NCBI GenBank assembly: GCA_002269645.1
Contig: NIVC01004998.1
Coordinates: 1 to 28,899, forward strand
DNA from: Macrostomum lignano
Taxonomy: Eukaryota
Direction: 5' to 3'
DNA length: 28,899 nt
The translations under genes were made by a program, and so were the position numbers. The notes beneath the pieces were generated by a model. That model searched no databases. It worked only from the letters and a program-made list of their open reading frames with translations, and was not told the DNA's origin. This document shows positions 1-21,020 of the stretch, one piece after another (the first letter of the stretch is position 1; every line of letters starts with the position of its first letter).

Positions 1-285
1 TAGCACTCCATGCTTTCCAATCCAGACTCCTATTAGCACTCCATGCTTCCAATCCAGACTCTATTAGCACTCCCATGCTTTCCAATCGACTCCTATTAGC
101 ACTCCATGCTTTCCAATCCAGACTCCTATTAGCACTCCATGCTTTCCAATCCAGAATCCTATTAGCACTCCATGCTATCCGATTCAGAATCCTAGTAGCT
201 CTCCATCCATGCTATCCGATCCAGACTCCTTTTAGCACTCCATGCTTTCTAATCCAAACTCCTATTAGCACTCCATGCTGTTCAA
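1..285. repeat. 33-bp minisatellite (TAGCACTCCATGCTTTCCAATCCAGACTCCTAT), ~8 copies, truncated by the window start
   Basis: Unit recurs at 1, 34, 65 and onward with small indels, decaying toward ~285. ORF 75..311 is a by-product. Confidence 0.95.
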
Positions 286-496
286 TCGAGACCGGCTGCG
301 TGATGCAGTGAGAACAATAATTTGTTAAGGTTTCTGTGTCGTTTATTTTAAGGAGGAATTCAACGTTAAGTTAATAGAATTCAAAAAGAAGAATTACAAC
401 GTAAACTAAAAGGCATAATAGCTACAACTTTTAAACAAAAGTACACACAGAATCGAACGAGCTGTCAATCACAAATGGCTCAGAATTTCCAATTGT

Positions 497-3400
497 TCAA
501 CGAGCACTCGGCGGTTTCATCTGCATGGTCTTGAAGAAGTCGCCGCCCCTGTACTTCTGCGCGGTTTCGGCCGCCTCAGGCCGGACGCGGGGCCCGGCAC
601 GCGCCGATGATGGCGCCGCGGCGCCAGTGATAACCAGCGACGCCGTGCCGCGATTCCTCGCCGCGTGTTCCTCTGCCAAGCCGGAGGTTGCCTTCGACTT
701 GCGCGGCGGTTCCGGTGCATATTCGAGCTGCCCAGCAGGGCTTTGGCGGCGTCGCCGCGGCCTTTGGCTGCGAGCTCCTTGGCTACGTCGGACTTTAGCG
801 CGCGCTCGTGCGTCTTGTGATCTTTCGGCGGAGCCCGGTAGTCTGTGTCGCCTAGGCAACTGTCCATGACGCCCCGGTTGCGCTCGGCCGCCTGTTTAGA
901 GTGATGGTGCGATAGGGGGACAATGGAATCAATATTTTCAGGAAGCCTGGGGCCACCCTGGCGCAAGGCCTTCGGTGACAGCGTCTCACAACCATTGCTG
1001 ACAGCAATTCTGCACCTTTTGTGCTCGTCTCGATAGACTAACAGAGGAAAAACAAACGAGTACTTAGGCAGGTAAGACTTTTGCCGGAAAACCAGAACAA
1101 GAGCTCCTTAGGACAACCCACGCTTATATTTGACATCTAACAATAAATTATTACACGATTAATAAATTAGAAACCCAAAATGTCACGTGATTCCAAAATA
1201 CATTATACGAATGATTTATGAACTGCACTACTTTAAGTAGAGTAGTAAGAAAAAATACCCTATTTAGTTAGTCAGAAAACGGCCCTTTTACGGGCTCCTT
1301 GCCACGACACAACACTTTGTGCCTTTGGGGGTTGGCCCTTATGGGTGTAAAAACCAGGACGAGATCCCGGAAAATTTTGGTGCCTCCAGGCTAAGTCAGC
1401 CTCCATCCACTCCCTGTTGAATAAATTCAAACAAAATAATCAATATGGGCCATTCCGTCAGTTAAATGCGCAGCTTTTATATCAGTAGTGCGTTGCAACA
1501 ATTGTCAGCATTTTGTTTCTGGAAAATTTTATAAGAAAACCAGTTCGTGTCAAGGTACTCAGCAACCTCAATACTGCTTTGGAAGAAAGCATGCTACTTT
1601 TGTCCTATCCCATTGATCCCACTCGAATCCCCATTGATTCCACCCAAACACCATTGATCCCACTCAAATCCCCATTGATTCCACCCAAACACCATTGATT
1701 CCACTCGAATCCCCATTGATTCCACTCAAAAACCATTGATCCCACTCGAATCCCCATTGATTCCACCCAAACACCATTGATCCCACTCGAATCCCCATTG
1801 ATTCCACCCAAACACCATTGATCCCACTCGAATCCCATTGATTCCACCAAACACCATTGATCCCACTCGAATCCCATTGATTCCACTCAAACATCATTGA
1901 TTCCACTCAAATCCCATTGATTCCACTCAAACATCATTGATCCCACTTGAATCCGCATTGATTCCACTCAAACATCATTGATCCCACTTGAATCCCATTG
2001 ATCCACTCACATTATTGGTCCACTCAAACATCATTGATCTCACTTGAATTCCACTGATCCCACTCAAACATCATTGATTCCACTTAAATCCCATCGATTA
2101 CACTTAAATCCAGTTAAATCCAAATAAAACCTGAGGGACCAAATTAAAAGCACCTCAATGATTTCATTCCCTTTAAAAGTACGGATCAAACTACACCAAC
2201 CTCCTGGGCGGGCCCGGACGAACTCTGGGCTGAGGCCGTGGCGAGCTGTACTGCCGGTTCTGTTCCTGGTTGAACCACTGCGACATCTGGCCTTTGGCTC
2301 GGTTGGCGAACTCTTCAGCCTCCGGCCTGGTCTTCCTGACAACCCGAGCATCCGCTGCCTGCTCGGCCGCCGATGCTGCCGACGAACTCACGCCGATGTG
2401 CCCGCGGGTGTTGCGCTGGTACACCTCCTGGGCCAAGTCGCCCTTCACCTTGGCGGCCGCGACTGGTGGCTCTTGGTGGCTGGCGCCGCGTGAATAATCA
2501 AAGCAGTCGCGCATCTGCGAGCCCTGCAGCGATCAGGTTCAATGTTGCAGCGCAGTGAGAAATTGGGATGGGTGAGATGGGGAGAGATAGTGAGAACGGA
2601 AAAGAGATAGGGGAAAGATTGAGAGAGATGAGGAGAGGTGAGATAAAGGAATTTTAGGAGAGTGTTTGCATGAGGCCAAGAAGGAAAGACTATAGAATAA
2701 GCTCTTAGTACGAGCTAGAAGATATAAGGAGGAATATCGAATACAGATGATAAACAATGAGAGTATTGGCGCTAATGAAGACTACCAAAATGTTTCAAAT
2801 CAACGATAAAGCATCGGCAGCGCTATTCAACTCTCAATTACCTTCGAAGAGGCCTCGTAGTTGGCCAACGAGCTGCTGGTGGGGCACCGGTGGCCGTACA
2901 CAGCAACACCATCCTCAGCCGGATCTACTTTGCGCGTCATCCAGTCAGTGCCAGTCCCGTGCCGGTTCCGCTCGGCGTATTCAGCGCCTTCGCCTCTAGT
3001 CCGGAGACGGGCGCGTTGAAGGCGCCGTAGTCGGTCGGGCGTCGTGTCGGTACCAGTCGGCCTGGGAGCGCATCGACCTGGCGATCTCGCGTCCAGCCTC
3101 GGACGTGCACTTTGGCCCGGGCGCCGCCTGCGGGTCCGGCTTCTTGTTGTGATCGAACCAGTCGCCCTCGCGAGCCTGGTTGGCACGCTGCATCAGCTCC
3201 ACATTAGACGGTGGATAAACTTTAACTGGACGCGGCTTCGGCCTGAACGCGTAATTTCCGTGGAAGTCGAACCACTTGTCCTCCTGGTTGTTGAACTTGT
3301 CGGCGATGCGTCTGGCGTCCTCGTCGCGCAGTCGAACTGGCGCCGGCGCGTCGTCCGGCGGCAGGCGGTAGTTGTGGAACACCTCGCCGACTGTCGGCTT

Positions 3401-6218
3401 GTTTCTGATGGTAAGAAGCAATGCTATGTAGCTAAATAATTTTGACTATAAGCAGCGATCTAGAGCCAGATAGCAGCTTCCAATTTACACATTTTACTGA
3501 ATTTACCGCAACTTCGGTTTGATTAAACGAGTTTTGTTAATTTGGCTTTATCCGACAAAAATATGCAATACGTATCTAACTGTGGTCACCCAGCTGACAT
3601 CGTCCTAGCACCAGTTGCGAGGCAATTCTGCTCATTCCGCCGACTCCTGAGCATATTAAACGCGACAATGCAGTTATGCAGGCACGCACTCATACATGCT
3701 CACACATACTCATACACAATCTCACGCATACTCATACACAATCTCATGCATACTCATACACAATCTCACGCATACTCATACACAATCTCACGCATACTCA
3801 TACACAATCTCACGCATACTCATACACAATCTCACGCATACTCATACACAATCTCACGCATACTCATACACAATCTCACGCATACTCATACACAATCTCA
3901 CACATACTCATACACAATCTCACGCATACTCATACACAATCTCACACATACTCCTACACAATCTCACGCATACTCATACACAATCTCACGCATACTCATA
4001 CACAGTCTCACGCATACTCATACACAATCTCACGCATACTCATACACAATCTCACGCATACTCATACACAATCTCACGCATACTCATACACAATCTCACG
4101 CATACTCATACACAATCTCACGCATACTCATACACAATCTCACGCATACTCATACACAGTCTCACGCATACTCATACACAATCTCACGCATACTCATACA
4201 CAATCTCACGCATACTCATACACAATCTCACACATACTCATACACAATCTCACGCATACTCATACACAATCTCACGCATACTCATACACAATCTCACGCA
4301 TACTCATACACAATCTCACGCATACTCATACACAATCTCACGCATACTCATACACAATCTCACGCATACTCATACACAATCTCACGCATACTCATACACA
4401 ATCTCACGCATACTCATACACAATCTCACGCATACTCATACACAATCTCACACATACTCATACACAATCTCACGCATACTCATACACAATCTCACACATA
4501 CTCCTACACAATCTCACGCATACTCATACACAATCTCACGCATACTCATACACAGTCTCACGCATACTCATACACAATCTCACGCATACTCATACACAAT
4601 CTCACGCATACTCATACACAATCTCACGCATACTCATACACAATCTCACGCATACTCATACACAATCTCATGCATACTCATACACAATCTCACGCATACT
4701 TATACATGCTCACGCATACTCATACACAATCTTACGCATACTCATACACAGTCTCACGCATACTCATACACAATCTCCCGCATACTCATACACAATCTCA
4801 CGCATACTCATACACAATCTCACGCATACTCATACACAATCTCACGCATACTCATACACAATCTCACGCATACTCATACACAATCTCACACATACTCATA
4901 CACAATCTCACGCATACTCATACACAATCTCACGCATACTCATACACAATCTCACGCATACTCATACACAATCTCACGCATACTCATACACAATCTCACG
5001 CATACTCATACACAATCTCACACATACTCATACACAATCTCACGCATACTCATACACAATCTCACGCATACTCATACACAATCTCACGCATACTCATACA
5101 CAATCTCACGCATACTCATACACAATCTCACGCATACTCATACACAATCTCACGCATACTCATACACAATCTCACGCATACTCATACACAGTCTCACGCA
5201 TACTCATACACAATCTCACGCATACTCATACATGCTCACGCATACTCATACACAATCTCACGCATACTCATACACAATCTCACGCATACTCATACATGCT
5301 CACGCATACTCATACACAATCTCACGCATACTCATACACAATCTCACGCATACTCATACACAATCTTACGCATACTCATACACAGTCTCACGCATACTCA
5401 TACACAATCTCACGCATACTCATACATGCTCACGCATACTCATACACAATCTCACGCATACTCAAACACAATCTCACGCATACTCATACACAGTCTCACG
5501 CATACTCATACACAATCTCACGCATACTCATACACAATCTCACGCATACTCATACACAGTCTCACGCATACTCATACACAATCTCACGCATACTCATACA
5601 CAATCTCACGCATACTCATACACAATGTCACGCATACTCATACACAATCTCACGCATACTCATACACAATCTCACGCATACTCATACACAATCTCACACA
5701 TACTCATACACAATCTCACACATACTCATACACAATCTCACGCATACTCATACACAATCTCACGCATACTCATACACAATCTCACGCATACTCACGCAGG
5801 GTGTACAGCAGCCCTGACTTTCTAATCATCAGGCATGTACACTCTCTGTGTCTTCGGGGTTGACCCGTCGTGAGTTAAAAACGCAGACAACCTCTCAGCC
5901 AATTGTTTGGCGCTCACAAGCCACAAATGAATGCGGCCGCGCGCGGAATCGAACCAGGGATCGCGGCGTGAGAGACACGCCACTCCAACATTCCATGAGT
6001 CAAATGGTTATATAAATCAGCTACCCGATGAGATATTTAGCCGAGAAAAAATATTTTAAAAACGCACTTTTGAGCAATCTCCTGAGCCTCGGGCCGAACC
6101 CGCGCGCTGGCTGCGGCTCTCGATAATCGGCCTTGTGCTGAAACCATTGGCCCGGATTGCCGCGATTCTTCAAATAGTTGCTCTGCGCCTGGTCCTTAGA
6201 CGATTCCACTAGCGCCAT
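497..6218 (-). CDS. Uncharacterised repeat protein, paralog A (~517 aa after correcting four 1-nt deletions), about 14 copies of a ~35-aa PRVRPEA..A..NRG repeat
   Basis: Exons 6218-6068, 3404-2842, 2523-2201 and 1009-497 have GT..AG boundaries and compatible phases (2,0,2). ATG at 6218, TGA at 499-497. Exon sum is 1550 nt, and adding the 4 missing nt gives 518 codons. ORF-track pieces 6021..6308, 2996..3421, 2827..3186, 2191..2514, 517..966 and 497..859 are parts of it. Could be a pseudogene if the frameshifts are real. Confidence 0.75.
1277..1375 (-). mobile_element. Fragment of SINE family 1
   Basis: AAAACGGCCCT...CTTTGGGGGTTGGCCCTTATGGGT matches 12015-12088 (AAAACGGCCCT...CTTTGGGGGTTGGCCCTCATGGGT). 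Confidence 0.6.
1607..2110. repeat. ~19-21-bp minisatellite with two alternating subunits (CCATTGATCCCACTCGAATCC / CCATTGATTCCACCCAAACA), intron 3 of paralog A
   Basis: CCATTGAT core recurs about every 20 bp and the A/B alternation gives a ~40-bp higher-order period. Confidence 0.95.
3600..5997 (-). mobile_element. tRNA-derived SINE (family 1) copy interrupted by a 2.1-kb minisatellite
   Basis: On the minus strand: A-box-like sequence at 5995-5985 and B box GGTTCGATTCC at 5955-5945. 5793-5876 aligns to 12005-12088, and 3619-3653 aligns to the reverse complements of 10448-10479 and 11882-11917. Confidence 0.75.
3690..5795. repeat. 22-bp minisatellite (CTCACGCATACTCATACACAAT), ~95 copies
   Basis: Near-perfect tandem unit. 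It has no plus-strand stop and its period is not divisible by 3, which explains the three 700+ aa ORFs. Confidence 0.99.
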
Positions 6219-6964
6219 GCTAATGTGACTATTGATTAACCTTACCTTTAGTATTGAACTATAATAATACCAGATCACAACTCGAATACACGGCAAGTAA
6301 GCAGGCACAGTTTGCTGCTCTATCTATTGTACTCGCAGCTCTGAATTCCAACTAGACTTAGGAGGCGGGGAGAGGGCTGAGAGGAGGGGCAAAGCAAATG
6401 AATGGAGCGACAGTGAGTCAGTGCAGCTCTCACGAACACACCTGGCTGCTCAGTGACAACCCCGCTCGTAGAGCTCTCCACCATCCCTTTCTCTCTCTCT
6501 CTCTCCCGCTTACCGTCACAGTCTTACTACCCCAAAAAGGGTAGAAAGGTGGTCCCCCTAGCAACATGGGGTTGGCTACAGATAGGGCGACAGTACGCAG
6601 CCTCTTTCTATAATGTCTGTCTCTCTTTCTGTGCTCACGCGCATGCAATCTCTCTCTCCCTCTATTCCAGCAGTGCGCTAAGGCAAAAGCAGCAAAGGGG
6701 TGGCCGCATAACACCGGTAGGCAATAAGACTTAAATGAGGCACTGCAGTCAGTGTACGTACGTTTTGCTGCTGAGCGATCGAGGCGGCTCCAAGGGTGTG
6801 TATTTCCTGCCGCTGTCAAGAAAGCCAGAACGGTCGACCCGAAAGCCGAACGCCTCTCTCTTCGCAGTTTATTTAGTCAAACAAATAAGAAAGGCTACAA
6901 AGAAGCGGAGAACTTATTTGGAATTTGAACGGCTTTGGACTCCAAAGCCGCAGCAGATAGTCAT
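6219..6964. promoter_or_regulatory. Putative bidirectional promoter / 5' UTR region between divergent paralogs
   Basis: ~750 bp separate the two outward-facing ATGs. Contains GA- and CT-rich tracts (6360-6400, 6486-6510, 6620-6665). No core promoter element identified with certainty. Confidence 0.4.
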
Positions 6965-9150
6965 ATGGCTTCAATCAGCAGAACAAACGGCAATCAAAAC
7001 GGCCTTGGCGTCTATGGAAGGACCATGAAAACCTCAGTAGACTTTGCTGAAGATTACTATCAGCCGGACAAATACGGTTTCAAGCTGCACGGAGCCCCTG
7101 AAAGCAACGGTTTTGGCGCTACAACCGAGCCAAAGAAGCGCAGCAAGCCCATTAAAGTGCACAGCCCGAAGGTTCGCACCGGCTGGGACAAGGCAGCCGT
7201 TGTGGCAAACGGTGAACGCTCGCGCAGCAGCGCCGTGAAAGCGAACTTCGACTACAGGCCAGAGAATGCCGAACGCACCGAGAAGCAGCAGCCAAGGGGC
7301 AGCGCCATCGACGGCAGGTTCGCCGAAATCCAGCGCAAGCAGACGCACACTGAGATGGACAAAGTACTCAATCCGAGCAAGGAGCGCTTCTACCAGCCAG
7401 AGATGAATCCCAAGTGTCCGACCGAGGACAGCAAGGAGTTCTACAGGCGCAACCAGAGAGGCACGTACGGATTCATGGAGCCGCCCAGGGCCAACTACCC
7501 CACGGACGAACCCGGCAAGGTGCGCTGTCCATCCGCAGCGGCCCGGGAGAATCTGGAGAAGGGCCGCGGAATGGCTGGCCGGCTCATTCACCAAGAGGAG
7601 CGGTCGCGCACACCGCCGCCCAGCCTTCGCCTCGGCGCGTCGCAGGAGAGCCGCGAGAACTACGACCGATCGCGCGGCGGCTGCATGTCGGCCGTGTTCA
7701 ACCAGTCGGAGAACATTCGGGCCGGTGCGCAGGACCCGGCCCCGGCCGGTCGCGTGATCAAAGGCGAAGCGGCCGAGCAGAACGCGTCTAGGAATCGCGG
7801 CCAAACTGCGCAGCTGTTTGCGCCCGGTCGCGGCGCTCAGCCGGATCCGCAGCCGGCGCCGCGCGTGCGGCCTGAGGCGCAGGAGACGGCGGCCAGAGAG
7901 GGCGCCGGGATGCGGGGCACCTTCTACGGCGGGCCGCAGACGGAGCCGCAGCCGGCGCCGAGGGTTCGGCTGGGCGGTGGCGAGGTGGCCAGCAAGCTGC
8001 AGGGTACACTGACTAGCGAGCAGTACAACTATCGGCAGATGCCTCCCGATCCGCCACCTGCACCGAAAGTGCGACCTGAGGCTCAGGTATGTCTCTCTTT
8101 GAGGTGGTGTGAATTAAAAGACGCATTAAACCATACCTATATAGGTACGTGCACTTTTCGGAAGTGAGGCTTTGGTAGAAATTTCAGTTCCCTAGCAACA
8201 TATTAGACGGGCCAAATGCAAATTCTCAAATGGGCCTGCTGAGATGTTAATGCTCAAATGAGTTGATGTGATGCCAATGCTCAAGTGAGTTGATTTATGT
8301 GATGCCAATGCTCAAGTGAGTTGATCGATGTGATGCCAATGCTCAAGTGAGTTGATTGATGTGATGCCAATGCTCAAGTGAGTTGATCGATGTGATGCCA
8401 ATGCTCAAGTGAGTTGATTGATGTGATGCCAATGCTCAAGTGAGTTGATCGATGTGATGCCAATGCTCAAGTGAGTTGATCGATGTGATGCCAATGCTCA
8501 AGTGAGTTGATCGATGTGATGCCAATGCTCAAATGAGTTGATGTGATGCCAATGCTCAAGTGAGTTGATTGATGTGATGCCAGTGCTCAAGTGAGTTGAT
8601 CGATGTGATGCCAATGCTCAAGTGAGTTGATGTGATGCCAATGCTCAAGTGAGTTGATCGATGTGATGCCAATGCTCAAGTGAGTTGATCGATGTGATGC
8701 CAATGCTCAAGTGAGTTGATCGATGTGATGCCAATGCTCAAATGAGTTGATGTGATGCCAATGCTTAAATGAGGGCTGTTTAGATCGAAAATTCGACTGG
8801 AAAATGTTCGAGTCAAAAATTTATTTTACATGTAAAAGTATACATCATACAATTGAGTCTATTTAAAGTTTTTGTCTCAAAAGGGTTTACGTGCAAATTT
8901 TCGCATTCGCAAAGTTTTCATTCCTTTGTCTCACACGCAGGAGTACGCCAACAGGGAGCGAGCGGTGGTGACGAAGAACCTTCTGCAGAAGTACGGCCAG
9001 CTGCCATCGGACTTGCCGCCGAAGCCGCACGTGCCACCGCAGGCGTGGAACACGGCCTATAGATCGAGGGGCAGCGCCATGAAGGACTGCATCAATCCAA
9101 GCAAGCCGAGGCGAGTCCGGCGGCACAGGAGGCCCGTTTCCGCGCACTGA
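6965..9150 (+). CDS. Uncharacterised repeat protein, paralog B (443 aa), about 10 copies of the same ~35-aa repeat
   Basis: Exon 1 is 6965-8086 (ATG GCT TCA..., donor CAG|GTATGT). Exon 2 is 8941-9150 (acceptor CACGCAG|GAG, TGA). The phase-0 splice completes a repeat: PPPAPKVRPEAQ|EYANRER. No frameshifts. The start codon choice (6965 vs 7025) is uncertain. Confidence 0.85.
8247..8772. repeat. 31-bp minisatellite (GATGTGATGCCAATGCTCAAGTGAGTTGAT[C/T]) with 27-bp deletion variants, ~17 copies, intron of paralog B
   Basis: Direct tandem repetition, some units lacking 4 nt. Confidence 0.97.
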
Positions 9151-11332: not shown

Positions 11333-11698
11333 ATGTCCACTGGTGAACAAGCGGCCGCGAGCGACGATTCGAAGTCGAAAATCAAACAGCGATTGGAGCT
11401 GGTCAGCTGGATAGCCGTGGCTCTCATCTTGGCTGGACTCGTCGTGGTGGTTGTTGGCTTCGCTGTGCCCACTCACTATGAAGAGCAGGATAACCTCACT
11501 GCCAGACAGAATGAGCGCAATGTTATTTACTATTATCAGCTGAGAAAAAAGATGATCAACTGCGTCATGGCCGGCATCGTGTTGCTGACGCTGGGTTCAA
11601 TTGTTCTGTCTTCGGCGCTATCGACCAATTTGGCTTTGCCGTACTGCAACTGCACCGGGACAGCTGCTGCGGACAAAAAACCAGCTGCTGATGGCTGA
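11333..11698 (+). CDS. TMEM74/neurensin-family-like two-pass membrane protein (121 aa)
   Basis: Two hydrophobic helices (WIAVALILAGLVVVVVGFAVP; CVMAGIVLLTLGSIVLSSAL). The loop ARQNER and second-helix CV.AG..LLTLG..LS pattern resemble TMEM74 as recalled from memory. Possible 5'-UTR intron donor G|GTAAGC at 11142. Confidence 0.65.
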   Translation: MSTGEQAAASDDSKSKIKQRLELVSWIAVALILAGLVVVVVGFAVPTHYEEQDNLTARQNERNVIYYYQLRKKMINCVMAGIVLLTLGSIVLSSALSTNLALPYCNCTGTAAADKKPAADG

Positions 11699-13155: not shown

Positions 13156-13770
13156 TAATAATACCCTACTTTCGATCATAGACTGGTACGTATTATATAA
13201 ATTTTATGGCCATGTATACAACAAGCAACCACAAAAACGTGCAGTCGTGCCTCGTTAGAGCTTTTTACTAGTGTAGCCGGGCCAATTTCTTTGCCAATCT
13301 GTGTCTGCGCCGCTTGAAAGCAGCAGGTGCAGACACAGAAGAAGTAATCTTGTTACCTGCCTCTTGAACTGGTAGACACCAGAAGTTACACCAATTACCA
13401 TGCCGGACAACTGCCGCCTTAGTTACGAGTGTGTGTATATACATGCAGGTACTGCCGCAGGACTGACAGTGAAGAAATTCAATTAGTAGTAGGGAGGGGG
13501 GCAAGCGTTTGGTTTCGGGGGTGCAAAAAACCCACATTGTGGACTTTTCAGCTTTCCGACGAGCCCGAAGGTTGCCTACAAATAAAACTATTCGGCTTGG
13601 AAGTCAATTTTACTGGTATAAGCCATGTTCAGCTGCAGTAAAAATTATTTTTGATTAGAGCTCTATTAAAAACATTTGTTATATTCGTTTAGTAATTTGA
13701 TCCGGGCTAAACACAGTTAATTTTCATACTGCATGCATATACTAGTAATTTTATAAAGCGCCCACCAAAA

Positions 13771-14095
13771 GACGGGGGTGCACACCAAGAGACAGGGACG
13801 CCCACTAAGAGACAGGGGCGCCCAAAAAGAGACAGGGGTGCCCACCAAGAGACAGGGGTGCCCACCAAGAGACAGGGGTGCCCACCAAGAGACAGGGGCG
13901 CCCACCAAAAGACAGGGACGCCCACCAAGAGACAGGGGCGCCAATCAAGAGACAGGGGCGCCCAAAAAGAGACAGGGTGCCCACCAAGAGATAGGAACGC
14001 CCACCAAGAGACAGGGTGCCCACCAAGAGATAGGGACGCCCATTAAGAGATAGGAGAGTCCACCAAGAGACAGGGGCGCCAACCAAGAGACACAC
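13771..14095. repeat. 20-bp minisatellite (CCCACCAAGAGACAGGGG[T/C]G), ~16 copies
   Basis: Direct tandem repetition with variants. Confidence 0.95.
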
Positions 14096-14748
14096 CGAAT
14101 TCATATGTACGCCACATGCAGATATCAAACGTTTATCTAAAACGATAACGGTGTCATAGTTCTGCAGCATTGCATTACTCTATAGCAGCTGTGTCAGCTT
14201 GAACCCATTCTCAACACGGCCTGAACTGAGCAAAATCTCAGTACAAGATGTGCATCTGCAGCAGGCAATCGGCGTCGCCAGGCTATCATGGTTGGCTTAG
14301 CCTCGATCAAAAAAATGTCAGAGAAGAAAAAGCAGCAGAATTGGGAAAGCAACAAGAGCTAAAACTTTCTGAAAAGTTTTGCCGCAAGAAAAAGCCAGAC
14401 TGACCTCTCGAGACATCTGGCACAGCCCATACAGCAAAGAGGCACAAGATCCAAGGATTAGGGAAATTCAGCCTCTATAGATAGGGCCGTGATTTCAGAA
14501 AACCAACAGCTTCAACTTCCGAAATAATCACGCCTGACTGGCGCATTGTGCAGACACTCGGTGCAAATAGAAAAGGGGGCTCGATAGAATTTATCAGCTA
14601 GCGGGATCACTGCTTCGATAAAGAGAGGTTCTGAAGCATCTATTGACTGTGAAGCAGGCCCACATCCTTTCAGCAATTATCGTGCGGCTGACAGCCCAGT
14701 CGGGATTCTAGTCTCTTCTAATCTAGCCTTGTCTAGTCCTATCGATCA

Positions 14749-15107
<359 letters not shown>

Positions 15108-15108
<1 letters not shown>

Positions 15109-15553: not shown

Positions 15554-15777
15554 TGAGCGGTCTTACTGGTATATGTACTTTCTCTCTCTTTCTCCAGTCT
15601 GGGCGTTACCGAGATTAGAGGGTCACAGCGATTACTCTTAGTATTAATTCTCTTTGCATGAATTCCCAATTCTGACTTTCAATACTTCTTAGAATAAAAT
15701 GAGCAATGATCTGAGAATAGTTTATCGAACACGTTTTGAGCTTATAGCTAGCGAACGAGTTATCTTTTCCTTCCTAC

Positions 15778-15971
15778 TGTAGTCTGGCTTGTTGGTGCGC
15801 GTGCACTTAGATGTGCACGTCTGGCTGGTTTGGGGGTTGGGGTTTAGCGCTGCGGCGTGTGCGTGCTTAGGGTGGTTACACCCACCCCAACTTTGGCAAT
15901 AAATATATTGGCGTGAGCCAGTGAGGTCTCCTCACGTTTTGATTCTCTGCAATTCAACCCACGGTCTTACA
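15778..15971 (+). repeat. 5' LTR (194 bp)
   Basis: TGTAGTC...TCTTACA, identical by eye to the 3' LTR. AATAAA at 15898-15903. Confidence 0.98.
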
Positions 15972-15972
15972 C

Positions 15973-15985
15973 TGGTGGCAGCGGT
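15973..15985 (+). other. Primer-binding site complementary to the tRNA-Leu 3' end
   Basis: TGGTGGCAGCGGT lies one base after the LTR and is the reverse complement of ACCGCTGCCACCA, the 3' end of eukaryotic tRNA-Leu(AAG/TAG) as recalled. Confidence 0.85.
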
Positions 15986-15991
15986 CTCAGT

Positions 15992-16786
15992 ATGGCCAAA
16001 TCAGAGCAAGCCAGTTTATTGCCTCCAAAGTTCAGCGGCGACTCCAACGTGAGAATGTGGCTAAGCACGTTTGAGGACTTCGCCGACGACTGCGAATGGG
16101 ACGACAAGAAGAAGGCAAAGAAGCTGAGACTGCTGGTGACAGGAGAAGCGCAAATCTTCGTCTGGGAGCAGCCGGCAGACGTGTCAGCCAGCTATGAAAG
16201 GCTGAAGGAGAAGCTGATCGAGTGCTTCGGCAACAGTCTGAGCTGCTACAGAGCAATGGAGGAGTTTGAAGAGCGAAAGCGACAGCCCAACGAGTCGCTG
16301 AGGGAGCTCGCTTACAGCCTGAAGCTTCTCCACCTTCGGGCCCGCCCGGACGACTCCGTGGCGGCTCGGGAAAAGGACGTGAAGTTTCGTCTGATGCGCC
16401 TCCTGCCATCTGCCGTGAGAGATGCGCTGTTGAAGGACCAGGACGCGGACTCGTGTTCGCTGGCCGCCATCGTCGACAGAGCTGCGCAGCTTGAGCTGGT
16501 GAGCCACGCAACTACAGCCTCATCAGCCGCGGTGTCGGTAGAAGACAGACGGCTGAGCCAGCTGGAGCAGCAGATGCAGCAGCTGACAGCCAGCGTGCGA
16601 ACGGGACCACCCGGAAGAGACAGGCGTCAGAAGGGACCCATTAAGTGCTTCAGCTGCGGCGAGCCGGGTCACATTGCTAGGCGGTGCCCAAAGGCGATCG
16701 GCAGCCGCTGCAGCCGGTGCTCAGGCAAGGGTCACTCCGCCGCGGTGTGCCCGACACCAACTGGTCAGCCGCAGGGAAACTTCTGA
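15992..16786 (+). CDS. gag: Gag (264 aa) with two CCHC zinc knuckles
   Basis: Capsid-like N-terminus (PPKFSGD..VRMWL..FE). CFSCGEPGHIARRC and CSRCSGKGHSAAVC both fit CX2CX4HX4C. Confidence 0.95.
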   Translation: MAKSEQASLLPPKFSGDSNVRMWLSTFEDFADDCEWDDKKKAKKLRLLVTGEAQIFVWEQPADVSASYERLKEKLIECFGNSLSCYRAMEEFEERKRQPNESLRELAYSLKLLHLRARPDDSVAAREKDVKFRLMRLLPSAVRDALLKDQDADSCSLAAIVDRAAQLELVSHATTASSAAVSVEDRRLSQLEQQMQQLTASVRTGPPGRDRRQKGPIKCFSCGEPGHIARRCPKAIGSRCSRCSGKGHSAAVCPTPTGQPQGNF

Positions 16787-16832
16787 GGGTCGGCAGCCTG
16801 GGGCCAGCACCGACCCGCTCAAAAGGGGCCCT
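16774..16832 (+). promoter_or_regulatory. -1 programmed ribosomal frameshift signal: slippery G GGA AAC plus predicted H-type pseudoknot
   Basis: The heptamer 16774-16780 is in gag phase, followed by a 6-nt spacer. Stem 1 is GGGTCGG(16787-93)/CCGACCC(16810-16) and stem 2 is GGGCC(16801-05)/GGCCC(16827-31). pol is in the -1 frame. Confidence 0.85.
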
Positions 16833-19800
16833 CAGATCAGCGCCTTCAGTCTTCGTGAAGGTGCACTTTGGCAGCGTGTCAGCGCCTGCTCTGCTCGACA
16901 CCGGCGCGCAAGTTTCGTTGATGGACAAGTCACTGTTCGACAGACTGCAGTGCAAGATCGACTCCACCGACATCGGTGCGCTGCCGACGGCTGTCGACGG
17001 ATCCCGGCTGCGCTGCCTTGGCCTGTCAGCAGCGGATGTTTCGATCGGCCAGACCATCCGCGTGCGCCATCGCTTCACAGTCGTGGACGGCATCCAGCCC
17101 AGCCTGATCATCGGCATGGACTTCATTGGCGAGGTGTCGCAGGCGATGACCATTGACATTAAAGAAGGCGTCGTCAGGTTCGACGGCACAGCTGTGCCTT
17201 TCAGCAGCGAGCCGGCTCGAGCAGATTGTCGCCTGGTGCCGAGTGTCCTGGTGGCGCGTGTGGCGGCAACTACGGAGCTGCCCGCCCGCAGCGAGAAGCT
17301 GGTGTGGCTCAAGGTGGATTCCAGCGGCGAGCAGGGAGTCTTTGAGCCGTCTGAGGACTTCGTGAAGTCCACTGCCGTCCTGCCGGGCCGCGTGCTGGCG
17401 GTCTCGGACGACTGCCGCATCCCGGTGAAAATGTGCAACCTTGCAGAGGAGCCCGTGCTGCTGTACGCCAACAAGGCGGTCGGCACGTTCGAAGGCGCGA
17501 TGACAGACGGGGACGGTCGCCAGGAGGCGGCCCAGGAGAACCCCGTCGGTTGGAACATCAACGCGGAGCTGCCCGAACCGGATGCTGCGAGGCTGCGACA
17601 GCTGTTGGAGAGCAACGAGGACCTGTTCGCCAGGCACGAGTACGACCTGGGCACGACGGCGTTGCTGCAGCACCAAATCGAGCTGGAGCCGGGAGCGCGG
17701 CCACACCGGCAGGTCCAGCGCCGGCTGCCGCTGTCTGTGCGAGACCAGGTGGACAAGAAGATCGGTCAGATGCTGGAAAGCGGCATCATCGAACCGTCGA
17801 CATCGCCATGGGCCAGCAACCTGCTGGTGGTCCGCAAGAAGAACGGCGACATCAGACTGTGCACGGACTGGCGGCAGCTCAACGCCTGCACGGTCAAGGA
17901 TGCATACCCGCTGCCGCACCTGCAGCAGGCCATGGATGCGCTTGTCGGATGCTCCTGGTTCTCCACCATCGACTGCCGGCAGGGCTACCACCAGGTGGAG
18001 GTGGCGGAGGAGGACCGGTACAAGACGGCTTTCTATTCGACGCGCGGCCTGATGCAATTCTGCAAGATGGGCTTCGGGATGTGCAATGCCCCGGCGACGT
18101 TCCAGCGGCTCATGGAGCTGGTGATGTCCGGCCTGTCCTGGGAGTCCGTGCTGACTTATATCGACGACATCATTGTCTTCAGCAGGACGTTCGACGAGCA
18201 CTTAGAGAGGCTGGCGGAAGTTTTTAAGCGGCTGCGAGACGCGGGACTCAAGCTGCACAAGGCCAAGAGCGCGTTCGGCCATCGCCGGGTGCTGTACCTG
18301 GGACACCTGATCAGCGAGCAGGGCATCGCACCGGATCCCGGCAAGGTCGAGGCCATTCGCAGCATGCCCAGCCCAACGACGAACGAGGAGGTGAAGCGGT
18401 TTCTTGGAATGCTGGGTTTCTACCGCCGGTTCATCCCAGGCTTCAGCCAGACGGCGAGGGTCCTGCACGACGTCAGCGTGAAATCGAGGGACTTCGCGTG
18501 GAGCAGCGACTGCGAGCGAGCGTTCCGCGAGTTGAAGGACCGGCTGACGACAGCTCCGGTGCTGCGACTGCCAGATTTCACCAAGCAGTTTGTGCTCAGC
18601 TGCGACAGCAGTCAGTTCGCCGTCGGCGCGGTGCTCAGCCAGCTGCACGGTGACGCCGAGCTGCCTGTGGCGTTCGCCTCTCGCACCCTCAACAAGGCCG
18701 AGCGCAACTACTCGGCGACCGACCGCGAGCTGCTGGCGCTTGTCTGGAGTTTGAAGCACTTCAGGACGTACCTGCTGAGTGTTCCGAGCTTCAGAGTCTA
18801 CTCGGACCACCGGCCACTGCAAGGTCTGCTGGCAACGAAGGACCCCGAAGGTCGGCTGGCGCGATGGCTTTCTACGCTGCAGCAGTTTTCGTTCGAGCTG
18901 CTGTACCGGCCTGGCATGGACAACGTCGTGCCGGATGCGCTGAGCCGGGTGGCCGGCACGCGCCTGCAGCCTCGGTGGGACGACAGCCGCCTGCACGAGG
19001 AGCAACTGCAAGATCCGCTGCTGAGCAAGGCGTTCCAGGCGCTGACCGAAGGGATTGACAGCCTGTCCGATTCATGGGCGGCGCAGGTTCGCGAGCTGCT
19101 GGACGAGGCCTCGGTGAGCTCGGCGGGAGTCCTGCTGGTCGGTGGCCGGCCAGTCATTCCCGGTCATCTGCGGCCACATTTCCTGCAGCAGGCGCACTCG
19201 TGTGACCAGAGCGGACACCTCGGCGTCGACAAGACCGGAGCGAGATTGTCTGAGCGCTGCTGGTGGCCTGGTCTGCGACGGGACGTCGAGAACTGGGTGG
19301 CCAGCTGTGCGGTCTGCCTGGCCAAGAAGAGTCCAACCAAGCCGCAGAAGGCGCCGCTACAGTCGACGTGCCAGCCGACGGCTCCGTGGCAGCTGGTGCA
19401 GATCGACATCAAAGGGCCGCTTCCGCGTACGACTGATGGCAAGGCGTACATCCTGAGCATGTGCGACGCCTTCTCCAAGTGGATGGAGACGGCAGCCCTG
19501 GCGGCGATCGACGCGGTTACGGTGGCGGATGCGCTGCTCAAGTCGGTGGTTCTGCGTCACGGCGCTCCTCAGGTGCTGCACAGTGACCAGGGACGGCAAT
19601 TCGAGAGCGAGGTGTTCGGCCGGCTCTGCGAGAAGCTGGGCGTCGAAAAGACGCGCACGTCGCCGTTTCATCCGAGCGGCAACGGAATCGTCGAGCGAGG
19701 CAACCGGACGCTCGGCGATATGCTGGCGACGACGGTGGCCGAGAACCAGCAGGATTGGGACAGCAAGCTGCCATATGTGACCTGGGCCTACAACACCTCC

Positions 19801-20490
19801 GTGCACAGCACCATCGGCCTCAGTCCGTACCAGGTCCTCCACGGCTGGCCACCGAGGCTGGATCTCGACAGCTGGCTGATAAGCGGCGACCGGCCGGCAG
19901 CCGACGGTGGACATCACGGCTTCCTGCGGCGGACTCAGGAGAACCTGCAGAGCGCCTTCGACACGGTGCACGGCCGACTGCGGAGCGCCCAGGCCGAGCG
20001 CAACCGGCTGGCCAACCAGGACTCTCGGTTTGTGCCGTTCGAAGAGGGCCAGCTCGTGATGCTGCGCAACTCCGTCGTCAAGCGCGGCCAGACGCGGTGT
20101 TTGAGCGCCAAGTGGAAGGGGCCGTACCGAGTCCTGAGGCGCCTGGGCGAGGTCAATTACCGCATCCAGGACGAGACCGGCCGCAGGCGCCGGCTGGTGG
20201 TGCACCACGACCGCCTCAAGTGCTTCGTGCAGCGGCGGGCGTCACTGGAGCTTCCGGCCGCAGCAGACCACCAGCCGCCGGCCGCCGACTTCGACAACGA
20301 CGGCACCGTCGCTGAGCCGCCCGGGCAGGCGGCCGATCCTGGCGGCGACGCGGTGACCTTCTGGCCCGAGCTGCAGGCAGACGAGGCACCCGAGGAGCAG
20401 CCGGCGGCACCGGCCGAGCCGGTCACGGTTCCGCGGCGGTCGGCGAGAGAGCGGCGGCCACCTGACTTGTACATGGCGGGCTTTGCTTGA
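16780..20490 (+). CDS. pol: Pol polyprotein (aspartic protease, RT, RNase H, integrase), expressed as a Gag-Pol fusion
   Basis: Open frame 16684..20490. Motifs: ALLDTGAQVS (PR), YIDDIIVFS (RT), CDSS...ERNYSATDRE...YSDHRPL (RNase H), H..GH...C..C zinc finger, IDIKGP / SDQGRQF / NGIVER (DDE), KWKGPY (GPY/F). Confidence 0.97.
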   Translation, partial: LLRVGSLGPAPTRSKGALRSAPSVFVKVHFGSVSAPALLDTGAQVSLMDKSLFDRLQCKIDSTDIGALPTAVDGSRLRCLGLSAADVSIGQTIRVRHRFTVVDGIQPSLIIGMDFIGEVSQAMTIDIKEGVVRFDGTAVPFSSEPARADCRLVPSVLVARVAATTELPARSEKLVWLKVDSSGEQGVFEPSEDFVKSTAVLPGRVLAVSDDCRIPVKMCNLAEEPVLLYANKAVGTFEGAMTDGDGRQEAAQENPVGWNINAELPEPDAARLRQLLESNEDLFARHEYDLGTTALLQHQIELEPGARPHRQVQRRLPLSVRDQVDKKIGQMLESGIIEPSTSPWASNLLVVRKKNGDIRLCTDWRQLNACTVKDAYPLPHLQQAMDALVGCSWFSTIDCRQGYHQVEVAEEDRYKTAFYSTRGLMQFCKMGFGMCNAPATFQRLMELVMSGLSWESVLTYIDDIIVFSRTFDEHLERLAEVFKRLRDAGLKLHKAKSAFGHRRVLYLGHLISEQGIAPDPGKVEAIRSMPSPTTNEEVKRFLGMLGFYRRFIPGFSQTARVLHDVSVKSRDFAWSSDCERAFRELKDRLTTAPVLRLPDFTKQFVLSCDSSQFAVGAVLSQLHGDAELPVAFASRTLNKAERNYSATDRELLALVWSLKHFRTYLLSVPSFRVYSDHRPLQGLLATKDPEGRLARWLSTLQQFSFELLYRPGMDNVVPDALSRVAGTRLQPRWDDSRLHEEQLQDPLLSKAFQALTEGIDSLSDSWAAQVRELLDEASVSSAGVLLVGGRPVIPGHLRPHFLQQAHSCDQSGHLGVDKTGARLSERCWWPGLRRDVENWVASCAVCLAKKSPTKPQKAPLQSTCQPTAPWQLVQIDIKGPLPRTTDGKAYILSMCDAFSKWMETAALAAIDAVTVADALLKSVVLRHGAPQVLHSDQGRQFESEVFGRLCEKLGVEKTRTSPFHPSGNGIVERGNRTLGDMLATTVAENQQDWDSKLPYVTWAYNTSVHSTIGLSPYQVLHGWPPRLDLDSWLISGDRPAADGGHHGFLRRTQENLQSAFDTVHGRLRSAQAERNRLANQDSRFVPFEEGQLVMLRNSVVKRGQTRCLSAKWKGPYRVLRRLGEVNYRIQDETGRRRRLVVHHDRLKCFVQRRASLELPAAADHQPPAADFDNDGTVAEPPGQAADPGGDAVTFWPELQADEAPEEQPAAPAEPVTVPRRSARERRPPDLYMAGFA

Positions 20491-20513
20491 CTCTGGAACT
20501 GTCTTTTGCTTCT

Positions 20514-20526
20514 AGGGGGAAAGTAG
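20514..20526 (+). other. Polypurine tract
   Basis: AGGGGGAAAGTAG immediately precedes the 3' LTR. Confidence 0.85.
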
Positions 20527-20720
20527 TGTAGTCTGGCTTGTTGGTGCGCGTGCACTTAGATGTGCACGTCTGGCTGGTTTGGGGGTTGGGGTTTAGCGCT
20601 GCGGCGTGTGCGTGCTTAGGGTGGTTACACCCACCCCAACTTTGGCAATAAATATATTGGCGTGAGCCAGTGAGGTCTCCTCACGTTTTGATTCTCTGCA
20701 ATTCAACCCACGGTCTTACA
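20527..20720 (+). repeat. 3' LTR (194 bp)
   Basis: Same sequence as the 5' LTR, followed by TSD CTAC. Confidence 0.98.
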
Positions 20721-21020
20721 CTACAATTCTCTTCTTTTTATACTAGTTGATCGCGAGTATTTTTAATTTATCTATCTATGTATCTGTTCTGTGTCTCAGT
20801 GTGTCTAGGAAACCTATCTAGAGAGACAAATCCCTTTTCAAAATCCTGTGGTTTACTTTTTTGATGCCTTACACCGCTAGGCCAGGATTGGCTGGGTCTC
20901 GCACAGAAATCCTGAAACATCAAGCTATGCATATAAGACTTCTTCCAACCCCGGCTGAAACAAAGCTTATTCTCGCCAGAAGTTTAAGCATAATCAGCAG
21001 TCTGCAATTCCAACTCCAAA

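What the first reader, a model, noticed from the sequence alone, without database searches (positions are those of the whole stretch)
497..9150. Unrecognised tandem-repeat protein family: two paralogs built from a ~35-aa PRVRPEA..A..NRG module
Seen: A has about 14 and B about 10 repeats of consensus Pro-rich linker - [RK]V[RK]PEA - helix-like E-x-A-x-[RK]-N-R-G - hydrophobic/aromatic end. Examples: PQPAPRVRPEAQETAAREGAGMRGTFY, RKTRPEAEEFANRAKGQMSQWFNQ, PAPAGRVIKGEAAEQNASRNRGQTAQLF, AGPRVRPEAAETAQKYRGGDFF. No signal peptide, TM helix or recognisable globular domain. I do not recognise this repeat. Inference: evenly spaced short basic/helical motifs on Pro-rich linkers resemble proteins that decorate a periodic polymer (e.g. 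SAXO/Mn-motif or PYG-repeat ciliary microtubule-inner proteins), so this may be an undescribed axonemal or cytoskeletal lattice binder.
Basis: partly seen in the sequence, partly recalled or inferred. Interest (0 to 1): 0.75.

Follow-up and report, generated by a model that had tools for sequence, protein, structure and literature searches.

The report
Spiralian-specific tandem-repeat protein gene pair
Two back-to-back flatworm (Macrostomum lignano) genes encode basic, unstructured proteins built almost entirely from a conserved ~36-residue motif; the family occurs only in flatworms, molluscs, ribbon worms and their relatives, has no known function, and its build suggests, without proof, a protein that lines a cytoskeletal filament.

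Summary
The window is a whole 28.9-kb contig of the Macrostomum lignano Mlig_3_7 assembly. It carries two head-to-head genes. B (+ strand, 6965-8086 and 8941-9150) encodes 443 aa, identical to PAA46201.1. A (- strand, four exons between 6218 and 497) is Mlig007728.

Both proteins are tandem arrays with a 33-40-aa period: 13 repeats in A, and 8 clear plus 2-3 degenerate in B. The consensus is P-R-V-[KR]-P-E-A-x-E-x-A-x-[KR]-N-[RK]-G-[TS]-x3-hydrophobic pair, followed by a Pro-rich linker.

A repeat model built only from other species scores A at 134 bits and B at 91 bits; shuffled sequences stay below 5. There is no Pfam match and no PDB sequence match. AlphaFold2 gives only isolated short helices. 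The proteins have pI 9-10 and no signal peptide or TM helix.

All named homologs are spiralian. The oyster member CGI_10028829 is already listed, without function, among 37 "spiralian-specific motif" genes (Wu et al. 2020).

The window's copy of A has five 1-bp deletions, most likely assembly errors near the contig end.

The filament-binder idea fits the architecture but is untested. The family is not SAXO/MAP6: the Mn signature is absent.

The parts
6068..6218 (-). Gene A (Mlig007728) exon 1. ATG at 6218-6216. Encodes repeat 1 and the start of repeat 2. Has a 1-bp deletion at 6104 relative to the intact copy.
3699..5794 (.). 22-bp minisatellite of about 95 copies inside intron 1 of gene A. 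It is the source of three artefactual 709-773-aa ORFs.
2842..3404 (-). Gene A exon 2. Encodes repeats 2-7, the type ending in W[FY]xH. Has 1-bp deletions at 3006 and 3003.
2201..2523 (-). Gene A exon 3. Encodes repeats 7-10. Has a 1-bp deletion at 2215.
497..891 (-). Gene A exon 4. Encodes repeats 10-13. Stop codon at 499-497. Has a 1-bp deletion at 717.
6219..6964 (.). 746-bp spacer between the two divergent start codons, presumed to be a shared bidirectional promoter. The layout is the same on sister contig L001.
6965..8086 (+). Gene B (Mlig032595) exon 1: the N-terminal degenerate region plus repeats up to PKVRPEAQ. Donor GT at 8087.
8265..8773 (.). 31-bp minisatellite of about 17 copies inside the single intron of gene B (8087-8940).
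8941..9150 (+). Gene B exon 2: the last 1.5 repeats and the conserved basic C-terminus (GSAMKDCINPSKPRR...). Stop codon at 9148-9150.

Best explanation
SHOWN:
- The region holds two divergently transcribed paralogs of Macrostomum lignano.
- Both belong to a protein family seen here only in named spiralian species (Platyhelminthes, Mollusca, Nemertea).
- Each protein is basic and intrinsically disordered.
- Each consists almost wholly of 8-13 tandem modules of about 36 aa: P-R-V-K/R-P-E-A, then a short helix with an Ala-Ala face (E-A-x-E-x-A-x-K/R-N-R/K-G), then G-[TS]-x3 and a hydrophobic pair, then a Pro-rich linker ending in R-P-x-P.
- A-type and B-type subfamilies both predate the flatworm-mollusc split.

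INFERRED mechanism:
- The protein lies along a periodic cytoskeletal polymer, most likely a microtubule protofilament.
- Each module docks its short conserved helix on one lattice unit.
- The extended linker spans to the next unit. About 35 residues per 8-nm tubulin dimer is what the 32-residue SPM1 repeat does.
- The array would then act as a multivalent staple or ruler that stabilises the polymer, possibly in cilia.

The frameshifts in the window's copy of A are most likely consensus errors at a poorly polished contig end, not gene decay.
For: Identity:
- B matches PAA46201.1 exactly, and the exon model of A is verified on L001.

Repeat reality and consensus.

Module length is conserved across 45 homologs.
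- Start-to-start spacing peaks at 35-36 aa.
- Larger gaps fall near multiples of that value: 67-72, 108-114 and 140-146.
- Repeats within one protein are only about 30% identical, so the length conservation is not simply recent duplication.

Structure and composition:
- AF2 predicts one isolated 10-14-residue helix per module and no fold.
- pI is 9.1-10.0, GRAVY is -1.0 to -1.3, and there is no signal peptide or TM helix.

A-type proteins are colinear across phyla.

Precedent: the 32-aa R repeat of SPM1 places one short helix at the intradimer interface, and all 32 residues are needed to span the 8-nm period (PMC8144581).

Soft hints:
- UniRef auto-names are SPM2 and MAP6 for A, and DUF4005 for a cestode homolog. 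All three are microtubule-associated families.
- 10 of the 37 spiralian-specific genes in Wu's list are expressed in oyster larval ciliary bands (PMC10396302).

Assembly-error reading:
- Within the coding sequence of A there are 5 deletions and only 1 substitution.
- Below window position 3600, every gap in the window-L001 alignment (12 of 1 bp, one of 2 bp) is a deletion in the window, against 3 substitutions.
- No gap there goes the other way.
Against: - No experiment or expression datum for these genes was found. Four M. lignano papers' supplements contain no hit.
- There is no sequence similarity to any solved microtubule inner protein or MAP, nor to Pfam MAP repeats.
- The Mn signature is not enriched.
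- No canonical X-box lies in the shared promoter.
- In Wu et al. 2020, 18 of the 20 examined genes were ubiquitously expressed. It is not known whether CGI_10028829 was among those examined.
- The UniRef names could not be reproduced with the tools here.
- Basic, disordered repeat proteins can also bind nucleic acids or act as soluble scaffolds.
- B has no indel in 1.33 kb while A has five. Real decay of this copy of A is therefore not excluded.
Confidence: 0.4

Rival explanations
1. It binds actin or the muscle thin filament. In this reading it is a nebulin-like ruler in which each ~35-aa module contacts one actin subunit.
For: The module length of 35-36 aa equals the classical nebulin module length (established knowledge). 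The tandem, basic, non-globular array fits.
Against: There is no match to the Pfam nebulin model or to any actin-binding repeat. Nebulin modules are continuously helical, whereas these have Pro-rich linkers and only a 10-14-residue helix. The proteins have 8-13 modules, which is short for a ruler.
Confidence: 0.1
2. It is a disordered multivalent scaffold unrelated to filaments. Examples would be a basic nucleic-acid or RNP binder, a hub for a soluble partner that recognises the PRVKPEA/NRG motif, or a condensate-forming protein.
For: It has high pI and strong disorder with no fold. Most spiralian-specific genes examined by Wu et al. were ubiquitously expressed. No ciliary promoter motif was found.
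Against: Conservation of module length across phyla is not expected for a simple multivalent linear-motif scaffold. There are no RGG or RNA-binding motifs and no NLS-type clusters beyond general basicity. These points are from inspection of the sequences.
Confidence: 0.25
3. It is a divergent member of the SAXO/MAP6/SPM Mn-repeat family, as the automatic UniRef names suggest.
For: UniRef names for A are "Microtubule associated protein SPM2" and "Microtubule associated protein 6". The overall design is similar: a short helix plus an inter-repeat of 18-20 aa, giving a 32-35 aa period (PMC3280300; PMC8144581). A G-[TS]-x4-[FYLM] segment in many repeats loosely resembles [TS]-[TS]-x4-[YF].
Against: - The Mn-defining T/S and F/Y pair is not conserved. 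The position is mostly Leu, with aromatics about 21%.
- Mn regexes are not enriched over shuffles.
- There is no SAXO N-terminal Cys motif.
- There is no Pfam STOP hit.
- There is no hit to SPM1, FAP363 or SAXO chains in the PDB.
Confidence: 0.07
4. The window's gene A is a decaying pseudogene copy in the neopolyploid genome. Only B and the sister-contig copy of A would be functional.
For: Five frameshifting deletions lie in A. NCBI annotated only a 162-aa fragment on this contig (P0056). B on the same contig has no indel.
Against: There is only 1 substitution against 5 deletions in the coding sequence. All small indels near this contig end go the same way, as deletions in the window, including those in introns. 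That is the pattern of long-read consensus error.
Confidence: 0.2

Closest known systems
SPM1 / SAXO / MAP6 Mn-repeat microtubule inner proteins
   Same: They are tandem arrays of 32-35-aa units, each made of a short helix plus an extended, Pro-containing inter-repeat. They are basic, non-globular proteins, and several repeats are needed for binding (PMC8144581, PMC3280300). The geometry is compatible with one unit per 8-nm tubulin dimer.
   Different: The motif is different: PRVKPEA-helix-KNRG here, against [TS][TS]x4[YF]. There is no N-terminal Cys cluster and no HMM, Pfam or PDB similarity. The family is restricted to Spiralia, whereas SAXO is found in all ciliated eukaryotes.
Nebulin / nebulette 35-residue modules
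   Same: The module length is about 35 aa, and the modules form a long tandem array without a globular domain.
   Different: There is no SDxxYK motif and no Pfam nebulin hit. These modules are broken by Pro-rich linkers rather than being continuously helical.
Tau/MAP2/MAP4 microtubule-binding repeats
   Same: They are 31-32-aa basic repeats in a disordered protein. A K-x-G-S...N segment looks superficially similar.
   Different: There is no PGGG and no Pfam PF00418 hit. These proteins have 8-13 repeats rather than 3-5.
Lophotrochin, trochin and the other genes with spiralian-specific motifs (Wu et al. 2020; Piovani et al. 2023)
   Same: The phylogenetic class is the same: conserved in molluscs, annelids and flatworms and undetectable outside Spiralia. 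The oyster ortholog CGI_10028829 is in the same published list of 37 genes.
   Different: The sequences are unrelated. Lophotrochin has DUF4476, and trochin corresponds to CGI_10005224. No expression pattern or name could be tied to this family from the text held here.

Membership tests
SAXO/MAP6 (Mn-repeat) family | Repeated Mn motif: conserved T/S at position 6 and F/Y at position 12, with minimal signature [TS]-[TS]-x4-[YF] | tested here: not met
   Column frequencies over 261 repeats: [TS] after the conserved Gly is 49%, and the +5/+6 positions are mostly L/V/M, with aromatics about 21%. Regex counts equal the shuffle expectation in 7 family members.
SAXO/MAP6 (Mn-repeat) family | SAXO N-terminal cysteine-rich motif 1 | tested here: not met
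   There are 0 Cys in the first 40 residues of A, B and five homologs.
SAXO/MAP6 (Mn-repeat) family | Sequence-model match (Pfam STOP) or similarity to solved Mn proteins (SPM1, FAP363, SAXO chains) | tested here: not met
   No Pfam hit at E <= 10. No PDB hit with the repeat profile or with full-length A.
SAXO/MAP6 (Mn-repeat) family | Binds and cold- or nocodazole-stabilises microtubules; lumenal location | not testable with these tools
   This needs biochemistry or imaging.
[quoted passage not shown] 2020) | Detectable in molluscs, annelids and platyhelminths, and absent from non-spiralian genomes | tested here: met
   The exhaustive HMMER search gave 45 clusters. Every named one is from Platyhelminthes, Mollusca or Nemertea. 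The single "apicomplexan" transcriptome hit nests among the animal sequences at 33-40% identity, so host contamination is likely. CGI_10028829 is listed in Supplementary Data 1. Annelid membership rests on Wu's criteria and was not confirmed by a named hit here.
Tau/MAP2/MAP4, nebulin, SHIPPO/STPG, CIMIP2 (PYG) and other curated repeat families | Match to the family's Pfam model | tested here: not met
   There are zero Pfam families for A, B and 15 homologs, apart from chance-level hits at E >= 0.015 and far below the cut-offs.
DUF4005 (plant IQD C-terminal microtubule-binding region), as in the UniRef name of the Mesocestoides homolog | Match to Pfam DUF4005 | tested here: not met
   There is no DUF4005 hit for P0031, P0099 or P0100 at E <= 10.
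RFX-regulated ciliary genes | Canonical X-box in the proximal promoter | tested here: not met
   No match to four X-box consensus patterns in 6217-6964, only an everted pair of half-sites near 6555-6580. This is weak evidence, because flatworm X-box usage is not established.

The most novel reading that the evidence does not exclude
The PRVKPEA-helix-KNRG module is a new tubulin-lattice-binding motif. In that case the family is a Spiralia-specific set of microtubule inner or lattice proteins, a lineage-restricted functional analogue of SAXO/SPM1. It might be among the unnamed spiralian-specific genes expressed in larval ciliary bands.
Probability: 0.2. Interest if true: 0.65.

Novelty: new variant of a known kind. 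Interest (0 to 1): 0.45.

Why it matters
- Lineage-specific, strongly conserved proteins of unknown function are rare entry points into clade-specific cell biology.
- If this module binds a cytoskeletal lattice, it would add a new motif to the small set of short-repeat filament binders (tau, Mn/SAXO, nebulin).
- It would also give Spiralia its own structural component of microtubules or cilia, alongside lophotrochin and trochin.
- M. lignano has transgenesis and RNAi, so the two genes are directly testable.
- Practically, the family deserves a curated sequence model. The present automatic names (SPM2, MAP6, DUF4005) are inconsistent and could not be reproduced here.

Tried and rejected
- The search for homologous proteins timed out twice on B. 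It found nothing with the N-terminal half of A. The profile runs were capped at 8000 candidates and added only a few hits.
- Pfam gave nothing on exon pieces, full proteins or 15 homologs.
- PDB sequence searches gave nothing with B exon 1, the repeat profile or full-length A.
- AF2 models were of too low confidence (pLDDT 48 and 51, pTM 0.15 and 0.18) for fold searching.
- Literature searches found nothing for Mlig007728, Mlig032595 and Mlig009461, for motif strings, or for CGI_10028829.
- The supplements of four M. lignano papers contain none of the gene IDs.
- Tran et al. 2012, the paper describing SPM2, is not held, so the SPM2 link could not be examined.
- Fig. S16 of Piovani et al. 2023 is an image. 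Whether CGI_10028829 is one of its eight ciliary-band genes could not be read.
- The X-box scan of the promoter was negative.
- A-B adjacency was sought around A-type genes in five other loci and not found.
- Rejected: neuropeptide or secreted-repeat precursor, because there is no signal peptide and no dibasic processing pattern.
- Rejected: that the 700-aa ORFs at 3542-5863 are coding. They are minisatellite read-through in all three frames.
Full report
**What the window is**

Composition, GT-AG introns, minisatellites and a Ty3/gypsy element mark it as eukaryotic. The spliced product of the plus-strand gene is identical to Macrostomum lignano PAA46201.1/PAA69443.1. One cluster member of the minus-strand gene is recorded on a contig of exactly 28,899 bp. 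The window is therefore a complete small contig of the Mlig_3_7 assembly of this free-living flatworm (Platyhelminthes).

**Anatomy**

- **Gene B (Mlig032595)** lies on the + strand. Exon 1 is 6965-8086, the intron is 8087-8940 and holds a 31-bp minisatellite, and exon 2 is 8941-9150.
- **Gene A (Mlig007728)** lies on the - strand. Its exons are 6218-6068, 3404-2842, 2523-2201 and 891-497, all with GT-AG borders.
- **Intron 1 of A** holds a 2.1-kb 22-bp minisatellite. This creates three spurious ORFs of 709-773 aa.
- **Layout.** The two start codons face away from each other, 746 bp apart.
- **Sister copies.** The same head-to-head layout occurs on contig NIVC01001322.1 (L001). Adjacent accession numbers suggest it also occurs on a third contig (PAA91523 and PAA91524).

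**State of gene A in this window**

- On L001 the four exons translate exactly to the 478-aa P0013/PAA69442.1.
- In the window the exons are 1, 2, 1 and 1 nt shorter.
- The only coding differences are one substitution and five single-base deletions, at 6104, 3006, 3003, 2215 and 717.
- Along the 14-kb alignment with L001 (98.75% identity), every gap below window position 3600 (12 of 1 bp, one of 2 bp) is a deletion in the window. There are only 3 substitutions there and no insertions.
- This deletion-only pattern near a contig end, extending into introns, is typical of long-read consensus error. I read the frameshifts as most likely artefacts.
- A very young pseudogene is not excluded, because B on the same contig has no indel.
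- NCBI annotated only a 162-aa fragment of A here.

**The repeat**

- Iterated over the 45 homologs, the core consensus is PRVKPEAEENAEKNRGTMMKLLNNYG.
- The most conserved positions are P1, R2, V, K/R, P, E (71%), A (74%), A+4 (66%), K/R, N and R/K, followed by G (91%).
- Two tail flavours follow the core:
  - hydrophobic pair, then N-Y-G-x-L-P;
  - W-[FY]-x-H-[DE], seen in the N-terminal half of A-type proteins.
- Start-to-start spacing peaks at 35-36 aa. Larger gaps fall near multiples of that.
- A has 13 units in one register covering the whole protein. B has 8 clear units plus a degenerate N-terminal part.
- An HMM built without any Macrostomum sequence scores A at 133.7 bits and B at 90.6 bits. 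The highest shuffle score is 4.9 bits.

**Physical character**

- pI is 9.1-10.0 and GRAVY is -1.0 to -1.3. No hydrophobic segment is present.
- AlphaFold2 with family alignments gives mean pLDDT 48 (A) and 51 (B), and pTM 0.15 and 0.18.
- The models show only isolated helices of about 10-14 residues, roughly one per module, over the E-A-x-E-x-A-x-K-N segment.
- The conserved Ala residues at positions i and i+4, together with the Gly cap, suggest a small-residue face that packs on a partner. This last point is inference.

**Relatives**

- An exhaustive HMMER scan of 1.84 billion representatives found 45 clusters at E <= 1e-3.
- Every cluster that carries a name is spiralian:
  - Flatworms: Macrostomum, and the cestodes Spirometra/Sparganum, Mesocestoides and Taenia.
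  - Molluscs: Crassostrea/Magallana, Saccostrea, Ruditapes, Littorina, Patella, Babylonia, Biomphalaria, and the chiton Liolophura.
  - Nemertea: Tubulanus.
- One hit comes from a transcriptome of the apicomplexan Siedleckia, a parasite of polychaetes (my own knowledge). It is 33-40% identical over its full length to the animal A-type proteins. That is closer than Macrostomum A is to them, so I take it as host contamination.
- A-type proteins are colinear from end to end across phyla.
- B-type proteins share a characteristic C-terminus, G-[GS]-A-x-K-x-C-I-N-P followed by a basic tail in flatworms. The annotated end of B is therefore genuine.
- In five other loci holding family genes, no second family member lies within 10 kb. 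The A-B pairing is thus not general.

**Is it known?**

- There is no Pfam model and no similarity to any PDB chain.
- The motif strings do not occur in the searchable literature.
- The oyster protein CGI_10028829 is essentially identical to P0022. It is listed in Supplementary Data 1 of Wu et al. [quoted passage not shown]
- It is neither lophotrochin nor trochin. No function or expression is attached to it in the text held here.
- Piovani et al. 2023 (PMC10396302) report that ten of the Wu genes are expressed in oyster larval ciliary bands. The gene identities are in an image I could not read.
- UniRef carries the automatic names "Microtubule associated protein SPM2" and "Microtubule associated protein 6" for A, and "DUF4005 domain-containing protein" for a Mesocestoides homolog.
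- I could not reproduce any of these names:
  - No STOP or DUF4005 Pfam hit appears.
  - The Mn signature (T/S at position 6 and F/Y at position 12; PMC3280300 and PMC8144581; [TS][TS]x4[YF], PMC10973386) is neither conserved in the repeat nor enriched.
  - The SAXO N-terminal Cys motif is absent.

**Mechanism**

*Shown:* a conserved array of short-helix modules, constrained in length, in a basic disordered protein.

*Inferred:* this is the design of proteins that lie along a periodic polymer.
- The best-documented parallel is SPM1. Each of its 32-residue repeats places one short helix at the tubulin intradimer interface, and all 32 residues are needed to span the 8-nm period.
- A 35-36-residue module with a 10-14-residue helix fits the same geometry.
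- I therefore favour a microtubule-lattice staple or stabiliser, possibly ciliary, at roughly 0.3-0.4.
- The rivals are:
  - a non-filament multivalent scaffold (0.25);
  - an actin or nebulin-like ruler (0.1);
  - true SAXO/MAP6 membership (below 0.1).
- Nothing here tests binding or localisation. The negative X-box scan and the Spiralia-only distribution argue against a core, universal ciliary role.

**Verdict**

- The "unrecognised family" claim is largely right. It needs one qualification: the family sits, unnamed, in a published list of spiralian-specific genes.
- The cytoskeletal reading is reasonable but unproven.
- Interest is moderate. This is a clean, testable candidate for a new filament-binding motif in an experimentally tractable flatworm.

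Noticed in passing
window 15775-20722: A complete Ty3/gypsy-type LTR retrotransposon. It has 199-bp LTRs at 15775-15973 and 20524-20722 that are 99% identical, a gag ORF with a zinc knuckle at 15992-16786, and an intact 1268-aa protease-RT-RNaseH-integrase ORF at 16684-20490. The sister contig L001 lacks the whole element, so it is a recent insertion that differs between duplicated loci.
   Followed up: partly
window 11333-11698 (+): A 121-aa ORF with two hydrophobic segments matches Pfam Neurensin/TMEM74 (E = 6e-9, above the gathering score). It is probably a separate small membrane-protein gene downstream of B.
   Followed up: partly
window 3542-5863: All three + frames are open for 709-773 aa across a 22-bp minisatellite (about 95 copies, 95% matches) inside intron 1 of gene A. 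These long ORFs are artefacts of the repeat, not genes. The repeat copy number differs from L001 by several units.
   Followed up: yes
window 1-3600 compared with L001: Below window position 3600 there are 12 one-base and one two-base deletions in the window relative to the sister contig, with almost no substitutions. This suggests poor consensus quality at this contig end. Any ORF call in this part of the contig should be treated with care.
   Followed up: yes
window 24077-24857; 14739-15108; 13758-14092; 22816-23452; 1610-2108; 1-292: The contig is very rich in tandem repeats: 59-bp x13 at 98% identity, (CTAT)n x92, 20-bp x17, 16-bp x39, 41-bp x12 in intron 3 of A, and 33-bp x9 at the contig start.
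   Followed up: no
window 6555-6580: An everted pair of RFX-like half-sites (AGCAAC ATGGG GTTGGC) lies in the A-B intergenic spacer. It is not a canonical X-box, and its significance is unknown.
   Followed up: no
L002, L004, L005, L006 (ENA metagenome contigs): A-type family genes in these unidentified eukaryotic contigs are single uninterrupted ORFs of 442-506 aa, whereas the M. lignano gene has three introns. L005 and L006 also carry a gypsy-type pol ORF nearby.
   Followed up: no
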